64,000 nt of DNA from Rebecca billardiae RCC1528 (GCA_965240325.2 OZ251232.1:496001-560000), one strand, 5' to 3'; numbered from the stretch's first letter, positions 1,607 through 58,535 are shown. A program made the numbers and translations. Notes: generated by a model from the letters alone, not told the origin.

Positions 1607-4600
1607 TCAGAGGCTTAGCAGCGCACTCTCGCTCCCACGGCCTGCGGCTGCGCCGCGTCCGCGCGCCGCCTGCGGCTGGGCCGCGGCGGCGGCGGCGCCC
1701 GCACTGGCCGTCCGCGCGGCGCGCTCGCGCCACGGCTGCTCGTGCGCGTGCACGCGCAGCGCGCTCAGCGCGCGCAGGCCCGCTCGGCGCGCGCTTGGCG
1801 CCGCCAGTGCGCCGCCGACGGCAGCCGCCTCGCGCCATGCCGCCTCCGCCGCGCGCGCGTGCGCCAGCAGCCGCGCGCGGTGCAGGGCTCGGAGCGCGCG
1901 CGTCGCGCCGTGCGCGCGCCGCAGGGCGGCCGCGCGCGCGCTCAGCCGTGCCGCCGCGGCGCGTCCCCGCAGCGCGCTCAGCCCACGCCGAGCCCGGGCG
2001 GTCGTGCGCCCCCACTCCGCGCGCGCGCTCAGCCGCGCCGCCTCCGGCTCGACCGCGCCCGACGCCGCCTCCGCGCACCACGCGCACGCGAGGGCGGGCT
2101 CGAGCGCGGCAGCGCGCGCCGCGTCGATGGCGGCGTGCGCCTCGCGCCGCGCGCCCGCTGCCGTGCTCGTGAGCTGCGGCTCGTGCGAGGCGTGGCGTGC
2201 GGGGGGCTCGGCGCCGCCGGCGCTCAGAAGCGCGGCCGCGCCGGGCGCAGCCACCGCCACCAGCCTCGGTCCGATCAGCTCCAGTGCGCCCGCGCGCGCC
2301 GCCTGCAGACGCGCCGCGCGCGCAACCCACGAGCCGCGCGCGCGGCCGCCGCGCGCCGCCGCGCGCGCGAGCGGCTTGGCGGGCGCGGCCGCGCGCGGGG
2401 AGGCGTCGGCGGACAGCGCGCGCTCGCGTAGGATCGCCGGAGGGGGCGCCCAGCTCGGAGCCCCCAGCTCGCCGTCGCGCGGCGGCTGCGCCCAGACGGA
2501 CGGCGGATGCGGCGCGCCCCAGCGCGCGAGCGGCGGCGCCGACGCCGGCGGCCCGGGCGCCGGCCGCGGCCGCCGGGGCGGCGTCTGAGCAGAGGGCTCG
2601 CCGCCGGCAGGGGCCGCGCCATCATCTCCGGAGGAAGGCTGCGCGTCCGCGCGAGCCCGGCGTGTCGGCCCGGCCGCGCGCGCTCGGGCCGGCGCCGACG
2701 GCCGGCGGCACTCCTCCACCTCCCCTCGCCACGCCGCCGCCGCACCCGCCCCCTGCGGCCGTGCGGGCAGCTGCGCACGTGCGCTGTGCTCTGTGACACT
2801 GTGGACGGCGCCCAGCCTGGCTGCGCGCGCGCCGCACCCGCCGCACGCGCCGGCACCGAGCCACGCGGCCGGTGGCGAGTCTGGCGGGACGCTGGGCTGG
2901 CGGGACGGCGCAGTGGCCGGCGGTGCCGGCGGCGAAGGCAGCGGCGCGCTTGGCGGCGGGCTCGGCGCCGCCGAGGCCTGCCGCGCCGGCCGCTGCGCGG
3001 CTGGCGCGTCCGGCGCGCGCGTTGGCTGAGGCGGTGGCGGTGGCGGCGAGGAGGACGAGGCGCGCGGCGCCCCGCGCGCGGCCCGCGCGGACGGCGCCGC
3101 CCGCCCGTCCCAGCCCGCGCGCGCGCGCCCCGCGTGCGCCGAGCGGTCCGAGCGCGCGCGCTCTGCCGCGGCGGCGAGGGCACCGGCCGCGCCGCCGCGG
3201 GCGCCGAGCAGCTGAGGCAGGCTCGGCGTCGGCGGGGCGGGCGGCGATGCGCGCAGACGGCCGGGAGCGCCGCCGCGTGACGCGGCCGGGTGCGCCTCCG
3301 GCGTGCCCCAGCGCTCGGCTTCGCACGCGTCGCCATCCGCCCAGCGCACGCCGCCGCGCGCGCCCTCGCGCGCGCGCCGCGCCGCGCCGCGCGCCGCGCC
3401 GCCGGCAGAGTGCGCGCGCTGCGCCAGCGGCGCACGGCGTGCACGCATGGGCGTCGCCGCGTCCGGCTGGGCAGGCGCGGGGAGCTGCGCCGGCGCGGAC
3501 CGCGCTCGGCTCGCGCGCACGCGCGCGGCGGACGCGGCGGTGGCAAGCGCAGCGAGGCGCGCGGCAGCGGCCGCGCCGCCCGCCGGCTGAGCCGAGGGCG
3601 GCGCAGCGCGCGCGGCGCGCGGCGCGCCGCCTCGGCCGCGGTGCGCGAAGGGCGCATCAGCCAGCGCCAGCTGCGCGCCACGCGTGGCGTGCCAGGCAGG
3701 GCCGTGCAAGACGCCCGGCCCCGCGCGCGGCGACGCGCCCGCGTCCCACGCCGCGCTCGCCGCCGCCTCTCGCGCGCGCGCGCGCTCGGCCGAGGCCGCG
3801 TGCGCGCGCGCCACAGCGACACGGCGCGCGGCGCGCGCGGCCGCCAGGGCTGGGCTGTCCGTGCCGTCGGCGTCGGCGTCGGTGGCGGCGCTCGCGGCGG
3901 AGCGCGCGGCGAGCGCGCGTGCGCCGAGCCGCTCCGCCGGGCTGCGTGCCGGGCCATCGCGCCCGCCGCGCGTCTCTCGCACCGCCGGCCAGCCGGCGGC
4001 GGCGGCGGCGGCGGGCGGCGCGTCGGCGCGTCTGCTGCCGCAGGCGCGCAGCAGGCGCGCGCGCACGCGCGTGGTGGCCCCGCCGTGGCCGGCGGGAGGG
4101 CGGCGCAGGCGGGGCGAGGCGCTGCCCAGCGCGCGCGCCGCCCTGGCCACGTTGCGCAGCGCGGCGCCGCCCGCGGCCCCCTCCTCGGCCCCCGCCGCCG
4201 CCGCCGCTCGGCGCGCGCGCGCCGCCGCGCGCGGCCACGCGCGCGCGGGCGGCGCGGGCGGCGGGTGCGCGCGGTGGCGCGTGCGCACGTGCCATGCGCG
4301 CAGGCAGTCGCGCGCCGCGCCGCGCCGGCCGAGCACGCTGGCGATCCGCTGCACGTGCCGCGCGTACGCCGCGCCGCGCCACGCGTCGAGCGCGCGCACC
4401 GCGCCCAGCATCGCCACCAGCGCGCACGCGTGCGTGCGCACGCGCGCGCGCAGCCGCGCGCGCGCCCACCGCCGCCACGCGCCGCCGAGCGCGCCCGGCG
4501 GCGCGGCGCGCGGGCGCGCGAGGGCGCGCGGCGGCGACGCGAGGGCGGCGACGGCTGCGGCACGCGGGACGCCGAGCGGCTCGCTCGCAGCCGCCGGGCG

Positions 4601-4673
4601 CTGCGCCGAGCGCGCCGCGACGGGCCGCGCCCAGCACACCCCCTGCCGCGCGCCGCCGCCCTCCGCATCGGCG

Positions 4674-4719
<46 letters not shown>

Positions 4720-7700
4720 TGCCGCGGCGCTCGGCCGCGCCCGCCGACGCCGCCCGCGGCGCGGCGCCGCCCCTGCCGCTGCCCTGCGCCGCGTCGGCGT
4801 CGACGTGGTCGAATGGCCAGGCGAAGCGCGAGGGCGTTGCGCCGGGCGTGTGCCGTGCGCCGCGGCCAGAGCCCGCTCCGACGGGCGGCGACGGCGGCGC
4901 AGCCGCCGCCTCGCCGCGCGCGCCCGCCCCCGCCGCCGCCACTGGCACGGCGCGCGGCGGCAAAGCGCGCGCGGCCGCCGCCGCGTCAGCCGCACACCGC
5001 CCGCCGGACCGGGCGGCGAGCGCGCGGGCGGGTGTGCGCACAAGCGGGCTCGGCGTGCGCACGGGCGGGCTCGGCGTGCGCGCGGGCGGTGTGCCGCCGT
5101 CGCTGCCGCCACCCCCGCCGCCGCCCCTGCCCGCCCCCAGGCCGCCCGCCGCCAGCCGCAGCGCGGCGCAGGCGTGCGCGCCGTCCGCGAGCCCTGAGCG
5201 CGGCTGCGCACCGCCCGCGCCGCGCGCCGAGGCGTGGGCCGCGGCTCGCGCGGCCTCGCGCGCGCGCACGTGCGCCGCGAGCGCAAGCAGCGCAGTCCAC
5301 AGCCGCACACGCCGCTGCAACCGGCGGTGCGGCGATGCCACCCGGCGCAGCTCGCGCGCGAGCGCGCGCGCGCCGTGCGCGCGCCGCCAGCCGCGCCAGC
5401 CGGCGGCGAGCGCGGCCGCGGCGTGGAGCCATGCCGCCATCCGGACCGAGAGCTCGGCCGGACTGTGCGGCTGCTGGGCGGACGCGCCGTCGGCGGCGGT
5501 GGTCGCGCCGGCGGCGGAGGCGCCCCCGCTCCGAGCCGCGCCGGCGTGGCCCCCGCCGCAAAGCCCAAGCGCGGCGCTCACGCGCGCGGGCGCCGCCGCC
5601 GAGTGCGCGCGCGCCTGCGCCGACGCGGCCGCCACGCGCAGCGCACCGAGCGTGGCGCGCGCGCGCGGCGAAAGCGTCGGCGGCGAGGGCGGCTGCTGGG
5701 GCGCGGGGTGCGCTTCGCGACGCCGCGCCGGGCGCGCCGCGGCGAGCGCGAGCGCGTGCCGACGCTCCGCCGCCGCGCGCCGCTCGGCGAGCGCCGCCAC
5801 CAGCGCGCTCATGCTCCGCAGCTCGGCGCTGCCGCCGCACGCCGCGCGCGCGCTGCCGCGGCGTGGCCGTGCGCCGTGCTGCGCGCGCCCCTCCGCGCCG
5901 ACGCCGGCGGCAGCGGCAGCGGCTGCGGGCGGGGCGGGCGCGTCAGGCGCGACGCCGGCGGTGCGCTGCGCGCTCGCCGCCTCGGCGCACGCACCGGCGT
6001 CACCGGCGTCGGCCGCGGGCCCGGCGCGCACGCCGCCCTCCTCCTCCTCCTCCTCCACAGGGGCGGCGGCAGGGGCGGCGGCAGGGGCGGCGAGGTGCGC
6101 GGCTGCGCCCGCCGAGCGCGGCGGCAGCAGCAGCAGCAGCTGGCGATGGGCGTCCTGCGCGCGCGCGAGCGCGGCGGCCGCGCCGGCCGCGCCGGCGTGC
6201 CCCACCGGCCCGCTCTCGGGCCGCCCGCGCCACACCCTCTCCGCCGGGACACTTGGCCGAGCCGCATGGCGCGCGTGATGACCCGCATTACCCGCATTAC
6301 CCGCATTACCCGCGTGACCCGGCTGGGCGTGAGCGCGCGCACTCGGCGGCGTGGGCTGGCGCGGCACCGGGCGCGGGGGCGGGCTGCGGGCGCCGGCCGT
6401 GCGCGGGGCTGCGCCGTGCTCGAGCCCGGCGAGCCGCGCGCGCCACGCGCGCGCGGGCTCGTCGTGCACCGCGCGCCACGCGTGCAGAGCCGAGCGCGCG
6501 CGCCCTTGCTGCGCTGTCGCCGCGCACCGCGCCGCGGCCGGCGCGCCGCGCGCCGCGTGCAGGTGCAGCCCCGCGCGCGGCGGCGGCGTGCGCGAGCGGC
6601 GCGCGGGCCCCGGCGCCCCCGAGGCCTCGCGCGCGGCGTGCAGCCGCCCCGTGCTCGCCGCCCGCCGCTCCGCGCCAGCCACCGCCGCAGCCGCGCGCCC
6701 CTCGCCGGGCAGCGAGCGGGGTGGCCCGGCCGAGCGCGCCGCGGCCGCGCGGCGCGCAGTCGGGACGTGAGGCGAGCTCGGGCGCGCGCCCGCGCCGACG
6801 ACGGCTGCGCGGGCGCTCGAAGGGGCGGCTGGCGACCATCGGCGCGGCAGCTCGCGAGAGGCAGCTGCGCGCGCGCCTCCGTGCGCGCAGCTGGCCGCCG
6901 CGCCGGCCGCACGCGGCGTGGCGCCGCGCGGCGCCGCGCCCGCGCGCCACGCGCGCAGCGCCCGGCCAGCGCTCGGCGCGTGTGCAAGGAGCGTGCTGCG
7001 CCCGCCGCCCAGCAGCGCGTGGGCGAGCAGCGCGCGGAGCGCGCCGCGCACGCGCCGCAGCACGCGCCGAGCCCTCACGCCCGCGACCGCCTCGGCGCCG
7101 CGCAGCGCCGCGCGCAGCCGCCTCACGGCCGCCCGCAGCCCGGAGCGCCGAGCGGCCGCGCGCGCGACCGAGCTGAGCGCGCGCGCGCGCGCGCGCTCGA
7201 GGGCGGCGTGCGCGGCGCGCGTGCGCCAGGCACGGCACGCGCGCAGGCGCGCGCGCGCGTGCAGCGCTCGCGCGTGCGCCTCGGCGCCGCGCAGCAGCAG
7301 CGGCACCGCGCCGAGCGCCGCGTGCTCGCCCAAAGACACGGCGCCTCCGCCCGCGCGCCGAGCGTGTGCGGGGTGCGCGCGCTCGCGCCAGGCGCGCACG
7401 GCGAGCGTGAGGCGCACGCCGCGGAGGTGCGAGCACGCCATGCGCTCGTGCGCCCGCGCGCGCCTCCACGCCATCCACCGACGCACCGCCAGCGAGCGCG
7501 CGCGCACGGCGTGTAGCCGCGTGCCCGTGCGCACGTGCGCGCTGGCCGCGTCGAAGCTCGCGCCACGAGCGCGCCACCGTCGGATCGCGGAGGCGCGGAT
7601 GGTGGAGAGCATCGTGTGGTGCGCGTGTCCGAGCGCTCGGCCCTTCCCGTGCTCCCGCCGCCACGCGCGCAGCGCATGGCGTGCCCGCAGCACGCGCTGC

Positions 7701-7855
7701 GCGCGCAGCCGCCGGGTCTCCGCACCCGGCGGCCTCACGAGCTGCGATGCGGCGAACGCGACGGGGGCGCGGTGCGCGGACGAGGAGTGGGCGGCGTTCG
7801 CGTCGAGGTACGCGCGCAGCTCGGTCACCTCCGTCTGCACTGTGCCGCTGCCCAT
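1607..7855 (-). CDS. Large Ala/Arg-rich protein with Sfi1-like (centrin-binding-type) Trp repeats
   Basis: Open ~2080-codon frame from ATG 7855 (MGSGTVQTEVTELRAYLD). Periodic ALRAWRR, AIRRWR, LAVRAWRE, ALHAWR, ALDAWR, CLRAWH motifs are separated by low-complexity linkers. Hidden introns cannot be excluded. Confidence 0.5.
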
Positions 7856-8117
7856 TCGTGCGGCGCCCACGCGGGCGCGGGCGCGGCCGGCCAGGCGGGC
7901 GTGCTCACGGCCACCCTTTGAATCACGCGAGCGCCCGAGCCCGCCTCCGCGGCTTGCTTGCTGGTCCGGCCAACCGAGCGGGAGGGCGTGCGTACAGCCG
8001 TACACCCGTCCGTCCGGTGCTCCGGTGAAACAGGCAGTAGAAACCGCCTTTCTCGTCCTTTTGCATCCCGTTGCCTCCTGGCGGGTGTCCACCGCGACAC
8101 GCGAGAGGCGACCGGCC

Positions 8118-38556: not shown

Positions 38557-38675
38557 AGCTACGGCCACAGGTGCGCGAAAACACCGGATCCCATCCGAAC
38601 TCCGCAGTTAAGCGCGTAACCGGGAAGGTAGTAGTCCGGTGGGGGACCACGGGCGAAGTCTTCCTGCTGTAGTTT
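38557..38675 (+). rRNA. 5S ribosomal RNA gene (single copy in window)
   Basis: 119 nt; AGCTACGG pairs with CTGTAGTT (helix I); CACCGGATCCCATCCGAACTCCGCAGTTAAGC (loop C/box A); box C-like GTGGGGGACC. Confidence 0.95.
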
Positions 38676-56662: not shown

Positions 56663-56995
56663 GCGATGAATCAGGCCTCAGGGCCCGTGAGTGTCAGTGG
56701 AGCCAACGCGAGGAACTCTACAGCTTGAAGTAGTTGTTAGCCTTGTCAGTCATGTTCGTCGTGAATGAACTGCAGCCTCATGATGATCAATTTGAACAGA
56801 CAGGCAGCGCACTGAGTCAGCCCTGTGACGCGGCCTGCCGACGATGACCCGCGCTGAGAATGCTGAGAGTGCACGAAATAAAACAATCCTTCGCCTGCGA
56901 GAAGAAAAAAAAGGATGCCGCCTTTCGCCGCTGTCGACGACCGCTTGGAAACTGGCAGCAGCTTTTGCTGTGAGCCCGTGGACGGAGCACCTCGC

Positions 56996-58535
56996 ATGTC
57001 GTCCACGTGCACGCTCACTGTCACCTGCGCGCTCGCGTTGCTCTCGTCGCCGCACGCGGGCGTGCGCGGCTCGATGCGCGCAGTGGCACACCGCTTGCAC
57101 ACTCGCGCGTTCTGGCGCGCGCCTTCGCGGGCCGTCGCGCGGGCGACGTTTGCATCGGGTGCGCGGCCGCCGATGAGTGAGCGCCACGAGATCATTGCGC
57201 CGGCGGGCAAGCCCATGTTCGCCGTCGACCCGGCCGACGCGGTGCGACCTGGCGAGTGGGACCTCGTGTGCGACGTGCGCTCCCCCGCGGAGTACGCCGA
57301 GGACCATCTGCCCGGGGCCATCTCCTGCCCGGTGCTGGACGACGCAGAGCGCGCCGAGGTGGGCACGATGCACAAGCAGGTGTCGCCGTTCGAGTCGAGG
57401 CGGCGCGGGGCGGCGATCGTCTCGAAGAACCTGCACGCGCTGCTCACAGGGCCTCCCTTCGACACGCTCGACCCCGACGCGCGCGTGCTCGTCTACTGCT
57501 GGCGCGGCGGCGAGCGCTCGCGCTCGATCGGTCACGTGCTGTGCCGCATCGGCTGGGACGTGGGCGTGGTCCGCGGCGGGTACAAGGGGTACCGCACGCA
57601 CGTGCGCGGGGCGCTCGAGCGGCTCAGCGAGCTGCAGTACCACGTGATCGGCGGCTCGACGGGCTCCGCCAAGGGCTTGCTCCTCGACCAGCTCGTGGCA
57701 TGCGGGGCCCAGGTGCGCGCGCGGCATCCGCAGCGCGGGCGCGCGCGGGCCGCCCGCCGGCTGCGCACGCCTCACGTCCACGCGCGCCGCGCCGGGCCGC
57801 TCGCAGGTGATCGACTTGGAGGGCCTCGCCAACCACAAGGGGAGCATCCTCGGGAGCAACCCCTCCTCGAGCCAGCCCTCGCAGAAGCGCTTCGAGTCGC
57901 TCCTCCTCCACGCCGCCTCGAGCTTCGACCCGCGCCGGCCGGTCTTCATCGAGTCAGAGTCCAACCTGGTGGGCAGGCTGCACGTGCCGCCCGGCATGTT
58001 CCGGCAGATGCAGGCGGCGCCGCGCACGGTCCTGGAGCTGCCGATGGGCGCGCGCGTGGGCTGGATCCGCCGCTCGTACCGCTACTTCGAGACCACCCAC
58101 GTCGACATGCTGCGCACGGCTCTCAGCGGGCTCACCCGGCTGCAGGGCCGAGAGCGCGTGGCGGGCTGGCAGCAGCTGATCGACGCGGGCCGGTGGGAGG
58201 AGCTGGTGGAGAGCCTGCTGCTGCACCACTACGACCCGGCGTACGAGCGCTCGGCGCAGGTGTTCTACGAGAGCAGCGTCGCCGCCGCCGATCGCATGCC
58301 GCTCCCAGACACGTCCGAAGAGACGTACCGCGCCGCGGCGCAGCGGCTCATCGCCGCGCACGACAGCGGCGCCGATGCAGCGAGCGGCGCGGCGCAGCAG
58401 CAGCAGCAGCAGCCATCATCGTCGTCATCAGCGTCTGGCACCGCCGATGGCGCAAAGTCATCGGCCTCAGACGAGTCGCCACCGCCGGCGACGGAGCAGC
58501 AGCCCGTCGTGCCAGCACGAATGCTGGGCCAATGA
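56996..58535 (+). CDS. selU: tRNA 2-selenouridine synthase (MnmH/SelU/YbbB), with N-terminal leader; intron 57713-57806
   Basis: Rhodanese DVRSPAEYAEDHLPGA, ERAEVGTMHKQ, YCWRGGERS, GGYKGYR; P-loop-like GSTGSAK; Q-VIDLEGLANHKGS, QPSQKRFES, FIESES..VG, LLLHHYDPAY. Confidence 0.93.

What the first reader, a model, noticed from the sequence alone, without database searches (positions are those of the whole stretch)
56996..58535. Nuclear, spliced SelU/MnmH: possible selenium or geranyl tRNA modification in a eukaryotic organelle
Seen: full rhodanese + P-loop SelU with active-site CWRGGERS and a host-type intron, so not bacterial contamination. It has a ~60-aa leader (hydrophobic TLTVTCALALLSS then Arg/Ala-rich, acid-free) and a variant Walker A, GSTGSAKG versus GxTGxGKT. 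Established: SelU converts 2-thiouridine-34 to 2-selenouridine via a geranylated intermediate using selenophosphate, and is characterised in bacteria and archaea. Inference: plastid or mitochondrial tRNA(Lys/Glu/Gln) may carry Se2U or ges2U, which would need organellar selenophosphate supply.
Basis: partly seen in the sequence, partly recalled or inferred. Interest (0 to 1): 0.75.

Follow-up and report, generated by a model that had tools for sequence, protein, structure and literature searches.

The report
Algal nuclear tRNA selenouridine synthase gene
This alga's nuclear genome carries an intact, intron-containing gene for the enzyme that puts selenium into the wobble base of some tRNAs. The enzyme is treated in the literature as bacterial and archaeal, but the gene belongs to a widespread, single-origin clade in algae and probably acts in the plastid.

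Summary
Window 56996-58535 (+) is a two-exon gene: exon 1 at 56996-57712, a 94-nt GT..AG intron, and exon 2 at 57807-58535. It encodes a 481-aa SelU/MnmH. The two exons match adjoining halves of the NCBIfam MnmH profile, and the splice junction is gapless against every homologue.

The catalytic Cys, the G67-equivalent and the Walker A Lys are conserved. The gene is not unique. It belongs to one well-supported eukaryotic clade of about 46 sequence clusters. Named members include Diacronema, Aureococcus, Pelagophyceae CCMP2097, Bathycoccus, Cymbomonas, Trebouxia and Klebsormidium. NCBI already names the last two as selenouridine synthase.

The clade is sister to betaproteobacterial SelU. A cyanobacterial origin is rejected (AU p = 0.005).

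Gly-to-Ala is common in bacteria. The clade-specific change is Lys-Ser/Thr to Lys-Gly.

N-terminal leaders are signal-peptide-plus-transit-like in algae with complex plastids and transit-like in green algae, which favours plastid import. This is not tested. No RNA reads were listed, and the location of selenophosphate supply is unknown.

Verdict: a real, probably functional, organelle-targeted SelU. It is a new variant of a known kind, and its biology is undescribed in the literature I could search. Other windows of this scan report selenoproteins in the same genome, but this SelU appeared only on this stretch.

The parts
56996..57712 (+). Exon 1: leader, rhodanese domain and Walker A (residues 1-239)
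   Evidence: matches MnmH profile positions 15-169 at 197 bits. Pfam Rhodanese covers residues 89-200.
56996..57172 (+). N-terminal leader (residues 1-59): a hydrophobic segment TLTVTCALALL at residues 6-16, then an acid-free Arg/Ala/Ser-rich stretch
   Evidence: KD 2.13 over 11 residues, first Asp/Glu at position 62. GC by codon position 0.63/0.73/0.86, a coding-type periodicity.
57260..57595 (+). Rhodanese-homology domain (residues 89-200), including the MnmH-type insertion with the G67 equivalent (Gly138)
57497..57499 (+). Catalytic Cys168 codon (TGC) in the loop CWRGGERS. It is equivalent to E. coli Cys97, which is required for selenation.
   Evidence: alignment and sequence. The role of C97 is from PMC4830565.
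57653..57676 (+). Walker A GSTGSAKG (residues 220-227). Lys226 equals E. coli Lys155. Gly227 replaces the Ser/Thr found in all sampled bacteria.
   Evidence: 8/8 algae have Gly and 79/79 bacteria have Ser/Thr; the eukaryote-type clusters carry Lys-Gly, apart from one with Lys-Thr and two where the motif pattern was not found.
57713..57806 (+). Spliceosomal-type intron, 94 nt, GT..AG, 87% GC, with a possible CTCAC branch site 32-36 nt before the 3' splice site
   Evidence: Splicing is inferred from the frame and profile continuity, not from RNA.
57807..58535 (+). Exon 2: the rest of the P-loop (AAA_SelU) domain, the helical C-terminal region, the tail and the stop codon
   Evidence: matches MnmH profile positions 171-353 at 178.5 bits.
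58302..58532 (+). Non-conserved low-complexity C-terminal tail (Gln6 and Ser6 runs)
   Evidence: GC3 falls to 0.76. Homologues end earlier.
56915..56995 (+). In-frame upstream ATG and 27 codons, probably 5' UTR rather than coding
   Evidence: no codon-position periodicity (0.67/0.59/0.67).

Best explanation
[quoted passage not shown] An ancestor of several algal lineages acquired it once from a proteobacterium. Since then it has gained a spliceosomal intron and an N-terminal import leader. After import, most likely into the complex plastid through a signal peptide plus transit peptide, the mature enzyme would act on the wobble 2-thiouridine of organelle-encoded tRNA-Lys, tRNA-Glu and tRNA-Gln. 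The P-loop (Lys226) binds geranyl diphosphate and the sulfur is geranylated. The rhodanese Cys168 then uses selenophosphate to replace the S-geranyl group with selenium. Shown: gene structure, family membership, conserved residues, single eukaryotic clade, non-cyanobacterial origin. Inferred: splicing, translation start, targeting compartment, enzymatic activity. My estimates are 0.95 that it is a SelU orthologue, 0.75 that it is organelle-targeted, 0.55 that the organelle is the plastid, and 0.6 that it really selenates tRNA.
For: Both exons match adjoining halves of three MnmH equivalog profiles. The summed scores are 375.6, 300.1 and 269.8 bits, against cut-offs of 266, 219.75 and 241. Intact algal relatives pass the same three cut-offs. 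E. coli G67, C97 and K155 are conserved as G138, C168 and K226; their roles are described in PMC4830565. The careful ML tree shows the 8 algae as monophyletic (100/99) and sister to 64 betaproteobacteria (98/90). In the extended tree, 28 eukaryote-type rows form one clade (100). The AU test rejects an algae+cyanobacteria clade at p = 0.005. Leaders: algae with complex plastids have a hydrophobic N-terminus, namely the window (KD 2.13), Aureococcus (1.96, with ...THA|W), P0209 (2.55) and P0224 (1.99). Green algae have long, non-hydrophobic, hydroxylated/basic leaders. The leader of the Diacronema orthologue is disordered in the AF2 model (residues 1-65, pLDDT <50). The same genome uses selenium heavily and is reported to hold a SufE-MnmA gene (these notes are unchecked). 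Chloroplast tRNAs carry mnm5s2U (PMC9976899). Orthologues are transcribed: an MMETSP fragment exists for the Aureococcus cluster, and one Diacronema entry has a UniRef record but no contig, which I take to be transcriptome-derived.
Against: No RNA-seq run could be listed, so splicing, the transcription start and expression are unverified here. No targeting predictor was available. The window's best signal-peptidase-type site (ALA|L) lacks the aromatic +1 residue typical of complex-plastid signals. From Met27 onward the leader reads like a mitochondrial presequence. A Diaphanoeca (choanoflagellate) transcript in the same subclade has a mitochondrial-looking leader. The homology-based algal NADH-SPS (SelD) models in PMC4561486 show no leader, so organellar selenophosphate supply is unexplained. 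The Walker A Ser/Thr, the usual Mg2+ ligand in P-loop proteins, is Gly in the whole clade, and E. coli SelU needs Mg2+ (PMC9105526). Activity could therefore differ.
Confidence: 0.5

Rival explanations
1. Same enzyme and chemistry, but imported into mitochondria (or dual-targeted), acting on mitochondrial tRNA-Lys/Glu/Gln that carry xm5s2U.
For: From Met27 the leader is Arg/Ala-rich, acid-free and presequence-like. The Diacronema leader is Arg-rich with only a weak hydrophobic segment. A choanoflagellate transcript in the same subclade has a basic, presequence-like N-terminus.
Against: The leader type changes with plastid type: hydrophobic start in algae with complex plastids, plain transit-like in green algae. 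Plastid import predicts this pattern and mitochondrial import does not. The Diaphanoeca sequence could be contamination or a secondary transfer.
Confidence: 0.15
2. The clade has changed function. With Lys-Gly in the P-loop it uses a different co-substrate or performs only one half-reaction. For example, it might geranylate or otherwise prenylate plastid tRNA without selenation, or carry out sulfur transfer.
For: The Ser/Thr-to-Gly change is fixed in 8/8 algae against 0/79 bacteria and holds in nearly all ~46 eukaryote-type clusters. No leader is seen on the algal SPS models. Geranyl diphosphate is made in plastids (established knowledge).
Against: The catalytic Cys needed only for selenation (PMC4830565) is invariant across the clade. 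Only two other columns differ consistently from bacteria. All members still pass the MnmH equivalog cut-offs. The host genomes are heavy selenium users.
Confidence: 0.15
3. It is a cytosolic enzyme. Translation starts at Met60, or the leader is not a targeting signal, and the enzyme modifies cytosolic mcm5s2U tRNAs using the cytosolic selenophosphate made for selenocysteine.
For: Met60 would give a bacterial-length N-terminus. Selenophosphate is certainly made for Sec synthesis. E. coli SelU also converts anticodon-stem RNA that carries plain 2-thiouridine without a C5 group (PMC9105526).
Against: The leader codons show coding-type GC3 periodicity. Nearly all full-length eukaryotic homologues carry a non-conserved extension of about 55-190 residues, which fits a selected targeting function.
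Confidence: 0.1
4. It is bacterial contamination or a dead gene.
For: The nearest non-eukaryotic relatives are bacterial at about 45% identity.
Against: The intron is obligatory. The gene sits within 64 kb of uniformly GC-rich DNA that also carries a 5S rRNA gene. It lies in an all-eukaryote clade. The frame is intact, GC3 is 0.94-0.98, and all key residues are conserved.
Confidence: 0.02

Closest known systems
E. coli / Salmonella SelU (MnmH, YbbB), tRNA 2-selenouridine synthase
   Same: Same two-domain architecture (rhodanese plus P-loop/AAA_SelU). The active-site loop C-x-R-G-G-x-R-S has the catalytic Cys, the G67 equivalent and the Walker A Lys.
   Different: The window gene is nuclear, has an intron and an 88-residue N-terminal extension, and carries Lys-Gly instead of Lys-Thr in Walker A. 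It also has a 57-residue low-complexity tail. E. coli sits on a very long branch in the tree.
Betaproteobacterial SelU (Burkholderiales, Nitrosomonadales-type), often encoded next to selD
   Same: These are the closest bacterial relatives: 41-48% identity to Diacronema, and the sister group in the careful tree. Many share the TGSAK form of the P-loop.
   Different: All keep Lys-Ser/Thr and lack a leader. selD is adjacent in 22 of the 80 bacterial loci, nearly all betaproteobacterial, whereas no SelD homologue lies in the 64-kb window.
Eukaryotic algal SelU homologues already in databases (Klebsormidium nitens GAQ87259.1, Trebouxia sp. KAA6423438.1, Aureococcus EGB11558.1, Diacronema KAG8467142.1, Bathycoccus, Cymbomonas)
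   Same: They share one clade with the window gene, the Lys-Gly Walker A, N-terminal extensions and a nuclear context.
   Different: The window protein is only 57-63% identical to its nearest relatives (Diacronema-like). Its intron position is not shared: the Diacronema and Mamiellales genes are intronless, and the pelagophyte introns lie elsewhere.
Archaeal split SelU (Methanococcales)
   Same: Same chemistry and domains. There are weak hits to the archaeal N- and C-terminal subunit models.
   Different: The archaeal enzyme is two separate polypeptides. Here the protein is fused, as in bacteria.
MiaA / tRNA isopentenyltransferase P-loop (prenyl-diphosphate-binding P-loop acting on tRNA)
   Same: It offers a mechanistic analogy for a P-loop that holds a prenyl diphosphate. 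Foldseek gives a weak structural match of the C-terminal domain to 3exa (E about 0.02).
   Different: The match is weak and falls in the same range as nucleotide kinases. It is not evidence of homology beyond the P-loop fold.

Membership tests
SelU/MnmH tRNA 2-selenouridine synthase (NCBIfam NF008752, TIGR03167, NF008750) | Full-length match above the curated equivalog cut-off | tested here: met
The exon halves score 197.1+178.5, 157.7+142.4 and 149.5+120.3 bits, against cut-offs of 266, 219.75 and 241, and cover adjoining profile positions. The sums are a rough addition. Six intact clade members score 370-391, 295-327 and 272-311 bits.
SelU/MnmH | Rhodanese-homology domain with the catalytic Cys (E. 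coli C97) in the loop C-x-R-G-G-x-R-S | tested here: met
   Cys168 lies in CWRGGERS. It is invariant in 8 algae and 79 bacteria.
SelU/MnmH | MnmH-specific insertion in the rhodanese domain that contains the G67 position | tested here: met
   Gly138 aligns with G67 and is invariant. Profile positions 15-169 are matched as one stretch.
SelU/MnmH | P-loop domain with the Walker A lysine (E. coli K155, needed for geranylation) | tested here: met
   Lys226 aligns with K155. Precomputed Pfam AAA_SelU (PF26341) is found on all homologues.
SelU/MnmH | Canonical Walker A ending G-K-[S/T] | tested here: not met
   The window has A-K-G. Gly227 replaces the Ser/Thr seen in 79/79 bacteria. The same change is found in nearly all eukaryote-type clusters. 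The Gly-to-Ala change before Lys is common in bacteria.
SelU/MnmH | Selenophosphate-dependent S-to-Se exchange and geranyl transfer on tRNA | not testable with these tools
   Needs enzymology or complementation.
SelU/MnmH | Co-occurrence with a selenophosphate synthetase in the genome | not testable with these tools
   tblastn finds no SelD in the window. Only this window is readable. Other notes report selenoproteins in the same genome, which implies an SPS (unchecked).
Complex-plastid bipartite presequence (signal peptide plus transit peptide) | N-terminal hydrophobic signal-peptide-like segment | tested here: met
   The KD mean is 2.13 over residues 6-16. Aureococcus and three pavlovophyte-like relatives show similar segments, and green algae do not. 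This is a hydropathy calculation only.
Complex-plastid bipartite presequence | Cleavage site followed by Phe/Trp/Tyr/Leu, then an acid-poor, hydroxylated/basic transit peptide | tested here: inconclusive
   ALA|L is possible, read by eye. The acid-free stretch runs to residue 61. Aureococcus has THA|W. No SignalP, ASAFind or HECTAR was available.

The most novel reading that the evidence does not exclude
Marine and some freshwater or lichen algae possess a complete selenouridine trait. A SelU taken once from a proteobacterium was spread across green, haptophyte and pelagophyte lineages, retargeted to the plastid, and given a fixed Lys-Gly P-loop. Plastid tRNA-Lys/Glu/Gln would then carry Se2U (or ges2U). 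That would add a second, translation-level use of selenium in eukaryotes. It would also supply the missing enzyme behind the 1980s reports of selenium-containing tRNA in plant and algal cells.
Probability: 0.4. Interest if true: 0.75.

Novelty: new variant of a known kind. Interest (0 to 1): 0.55.

Why it matters
The selenium literature I could search treats selenouridine as a prokaryotic trait. This includes reviews and surveys from 2015, 2022 and 2024 (PMC4561486, PMC9312934, PMC11227280). The 2015 survey searched for ybbB only in prokaryotes. Selenium-containing tRNAs were nevertheless reported in Chlamydomonas and plant cells, with no enzyme or position known (PMC7216251).

A conserved, single-origin, leader-bearing SelU clade in ecologically dominant selenium-requiring phytoplankton (Aureococcus, Mamiellales, haptophytes) makes this directly testable. 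It bears on why these algae need selenium and on organellar decoding of NNG/NNA codons. It also raises the question of how selenophosphate reaches an organelle.

The fixed Lys-Gly P-loop is a natural experiment on what the SelU Walker A motif does.

The finding is tempered because the sequences are already public, and two are auto-named as this enzyme.

Tried and rejected
- RNA evidence: two run searches (RNA, then any kind) listed no run.
- Organism identity: an exact look-up of the neighbouring 864-aa ORF found nothing. The protein groups with Diacronema-like (pavlovophyte-type) sequences.
- Neighbouring ORFs gave no Pfam hit. The sigma-70 promoter and terminator scan found nothing.
- Cyanobacterial (plastid-ancestor) origin: rejected by tree and AU test. 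One caveat is that the bacterial sample is the 80 best matches to Diacronema. Another is that the group was named after a first tree, although the hypothesis is a natural a priori one.
- Giant-virus vector: the IMG/VR scan gave three hits, all with bacterial-type Lys-Thr.
- Shared intron as an orthology marker: not shared with Diacronema, Mamiellales or pelagophytes.
- 'Gly-to-Ala Walker A variant' as unusual: rejected, because it is common in bacteria.
- Structure: there is no solved SelU beyond an N-terminal domain (3g5j). Foldseek hits for the P-loop domain were weak. The fold used the Diacronema orthologue, because the spliced window protein has no reference.
- The big representative search was not run. 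The family is not in doubt, and the claim does not rest on an absence of relatives.
- 'Host-type' intron: only GT..AG ends, length and GC content were checked. It was not compared with other introns of this genome.

Full report
**Gene model.** The stretch holds ATG at 56996 and TGA at 58533-58535. An ORF in one frame runs to 57712, and a second frame opens at 57807. Removing 57713-57806 (94 nt, GTGCGC...CGCAG, 87% GC) joins them into a 481-aa protein. NCBIfam places exon 1 on MnmH model NF008752 positions 15-169 (197.1 bits, E 3.6e-58). Exon 2 falls on positions 171-353 (178.5 bits, E 1.6e-52). The same adjoining split appears on TIGR03167 and NF008750. Pfam finds Rhodanese at residues 89-200.

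In a multiple alignment the junction (...LVACGAQ|VIDLEG...) is gapless against algal, betaproteobacterial, cyanobacterial and E. coli SelU. Read-through would add 31 Arg-rich residues and break the frame. So the intron is required for a functional product. It is inferred, not seen in RNA, because no sequencing run could be listed.

**Start codon.** An in-frame ATG lies at 56915, but its 27 codons lack codon-position GC periodicity (0.67/0.59/0.67). The leader from 56996 shows a coding-type pattern (0.63/0.73/0.86), and the core has GC3 of 0.94-0.98. The flanks are about 50-53% GC. I therefore keep 56996 as the likely start.

**Family membership.** Aligned with E. coli SelU, taken from NC_000913.3, the experimentally mapped residues are all present: G67 = Gly138, C97 = Cys168 (in CWRGGERS) and K155 = Lys226. 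All three are invariant in 8 algal and 79 bacterial sequences. According to PMC4830565, C97 is required for selenation, and K155 (Walker A) is required for geranylation and probably binds geranyl diphosphate. Six intact relatives from the same clade pass three MnmH equivalog cut-offs.

**The Walker A variant.** The Gly-to-Ala change is ordinary: 51 of the 120 best hits, mostly Burkholderiales-type, read TGSAKS. The distinctive change is the residue after Lys. It is Gly in 8/8 algae and Ser or Thr in 79/79 bacteria. Of 48 sequences compared with the window, 44 read Lys-Gly. One eukaryote-type sequence (P0233) reads Lys-Thr. One bacterial-type sequence (P0235) reads Lys-Ser. In two the motif pattern was not found. 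In classical P-loop proteins this hydroxyl ligates Mg2+ (established knowledge), and E. coli SelU needs Mg2+ (PMC9105526). Only two other columns separate algae from bacteria consistently. The functional meaning is open.

**A eukaryotic clade.** The first search found the best hit in Diacronema lutheri, plus Cymbomonas, Pelagophyceae CCMP2097 and unnamed long-leader proteins. Cluster look-ups added the following:
- Aureococcus EGB11558.1, with an MMETSP transcript fragment.
- Diacronema KAG8467142.1.

A profile of the algal sequences separates about 46 eukaryote-type clusters (440-686 bits) from bacteria (437 bits or less). Named members include Bathycoccus prasinos, Klebsormidium nitens GAQ87259.1 and Trebouxia KAA6423438.1; NCBI already names the last two "tRNA 2-selenouridine synthase". 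A Diaphanoeca grandis EukProt transcript is also among them.

The genomic contexts are nuclear. The green picoalgal contigs carry CRM1, Gar1 and ANAPC4 beside the gene, Aureococcus has a dynein heavy chain, and Diacronema has PHO4 and a CH-domain gene. The Diacronema and green picoalgal genes are intronless. The pelagophyte genes have introns at other positions. The window intron is therefore lineage-specific.

**Origin.** I drew 80 named bacterial SelU genes from GTDB species genomes. In a careful ML tree the algae are monophyletic (100/99). The window pairs with Diacronema (100/98). The algal clade is sister to 64 betaproteobacteria (98/90), and cyanobacteria are distant. Forcing algae plus cyanobacteria into one clade costs 61.7 log-likelihood units (AU p = 0.005).

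In an extended quick tree, all 28 eukaryote-type rows form one clade (100). The window lies in a 97-supported group with Diacronema-like sequences and Diaphanoeca. This fits a single transfer from a proteobacterium followed by spread among algae. There are caveats. The bacterial sample is biased to the best matches, the root is not inferred, and the sister relation is unresolved in the smaller quick tree. In 22 of the 80 bacterial loci, selD sits next to selU. The window has no SelD.

**Targeting.** Bacterial SelU has a median of 19 residues before the core. The window has 88, and the other algae have 66-191.
- Algae with complex plastids start with a hydrophobic segment and continue with an acid-poor Arg/Ser/Ala-rich stretch. 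Examples are the window (KD 2.13), Aureococcus (1.96, ...THA|W) and two pavlovophyte-like relatives (2.55 and 1.99).
- Prasinophyte-type green algae have long, non-hydrophobic, hydroxylated/basic leaders.

That switch is what plastid import predicts. The Diacronema leader is disordered in the AF2 model.

Three things count against plastid import. The window lacks an aromatic +1 residue at its best cleavage site. Its leader from Met27 reads like a mitochondrial presequence. The choanoflagellate transcript has a mitochondrial-type leader. No predictor could be run.

**Pathway context.**
- Chloroplast tRNAs carry mnm5s2U (PMC9976899).
- Geranyl diphosphate is made in plastids (established knowledge).
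- Notes from this scan report many selenoproteins and a SufE-MnmA fusion in the same genome (unchecked).
- Algal SPS is a bacterial-like NADH-dehydrogenase-SelD fusion in Ostreococcus, Aureococcus and Emiliania. The published homology-based models show no leader (PMC4561486 supplement). How selenophosphate would reach an organelle is therefore unresolved.

**Literature.** I found no paper describing a eukaryotic SelU. A 2015 survey searched for ybbB only in prokaryotes. Papers from 2022 and 2024 call selenouridine prokaryotic. A microalgal review lists mnmH without analysis. Selenium-containing tRNAs in Chlamydomonas and plant cells were reported long ago, with no position or enzyme identified (PMC7216251). 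Only open-access papers were searchable, and Gobler et al. 2013 could not be read.

**Structure.** No SelU structure is solved beyond an N-terminal domain, 3g5j. The AF2 model of the Diacronema orthologue (pLDDT 80) matches 3g5j and rhodaneses in its N-terminal domain. The P-loop domain matches nucleotide kinases and MiaA only weakly.

**Verdict.** The gene is a new variant of a known enzyme and belongs to a public but undiscussed algal clade.

Noticed in passing
window 38557-38675 (+): A full-length 5S rRNA gene (Rfam RF00001, 101.7 bits) sits alone in the window. No tRNA genes were found in the 64 kb.
   Followed up: no
window 2001-8000: An extremely GC-rich stretch (83-87% GC in 2-kb windows), against 71% for the window overall.
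   Followed up: no
window 56915-56995: An in-frame upstream ATG has a purine at -3 and follows an A-rich run. Its 27 codons show no coding periodicity. It could be an alternative start that buries the hydrophobic segment.
   Followed up: partly
window 58302-58532: A 57-residue low-complexity C-terminal tail (Gln6 and Ser6 runs) is absent from all homologues, and GC3 drops to 0.76. A TGTAA lies about 48 nt after the stop codon.
   Followed up: no
P0009 (NCBI MDC1215452.1, labelled 'bacterium'): This MAG protein has a 108-residue transit-like leader and the Lys-Gly P-loop, and it clusters with green picoalgal sequences. The contig is probably a mis-binned eukaryote.
   Followed up: partly
P0228 (EukProt EP00040 Diaphanoeca grandis): A choanoflagellate transcriptome holds an algal-type SelU with a basic, mitochondrial-looking leader, sister to the pavlovophyte-like group. 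It could be contamination, a transfer, or a hint of mitochondrial use.
   Followed up: partly
P0233 (ENA metagenome, 349 aa): This is the only member of the eukaryote-type clade with a Lys-Thr Walker A (GVTGCQKTK). It could be a reversion or a relative of the donor lineage.
   Followed up: no
P0173 versus P0175 (Aureococcus), L090 6001-7480: Two Aureococcus annotations differ by a 22-residue insert just upstream of Walker A. It looks like a retained intron in one gene model.
   Followed up: partly
L002-L081 (bacterial selU loci): selD lies within 1.5 kb of selU in 22 of 80 loci, nearly all betaproteobacterial, forming a two-gene selenouridine cassette.
   Followed up: partly
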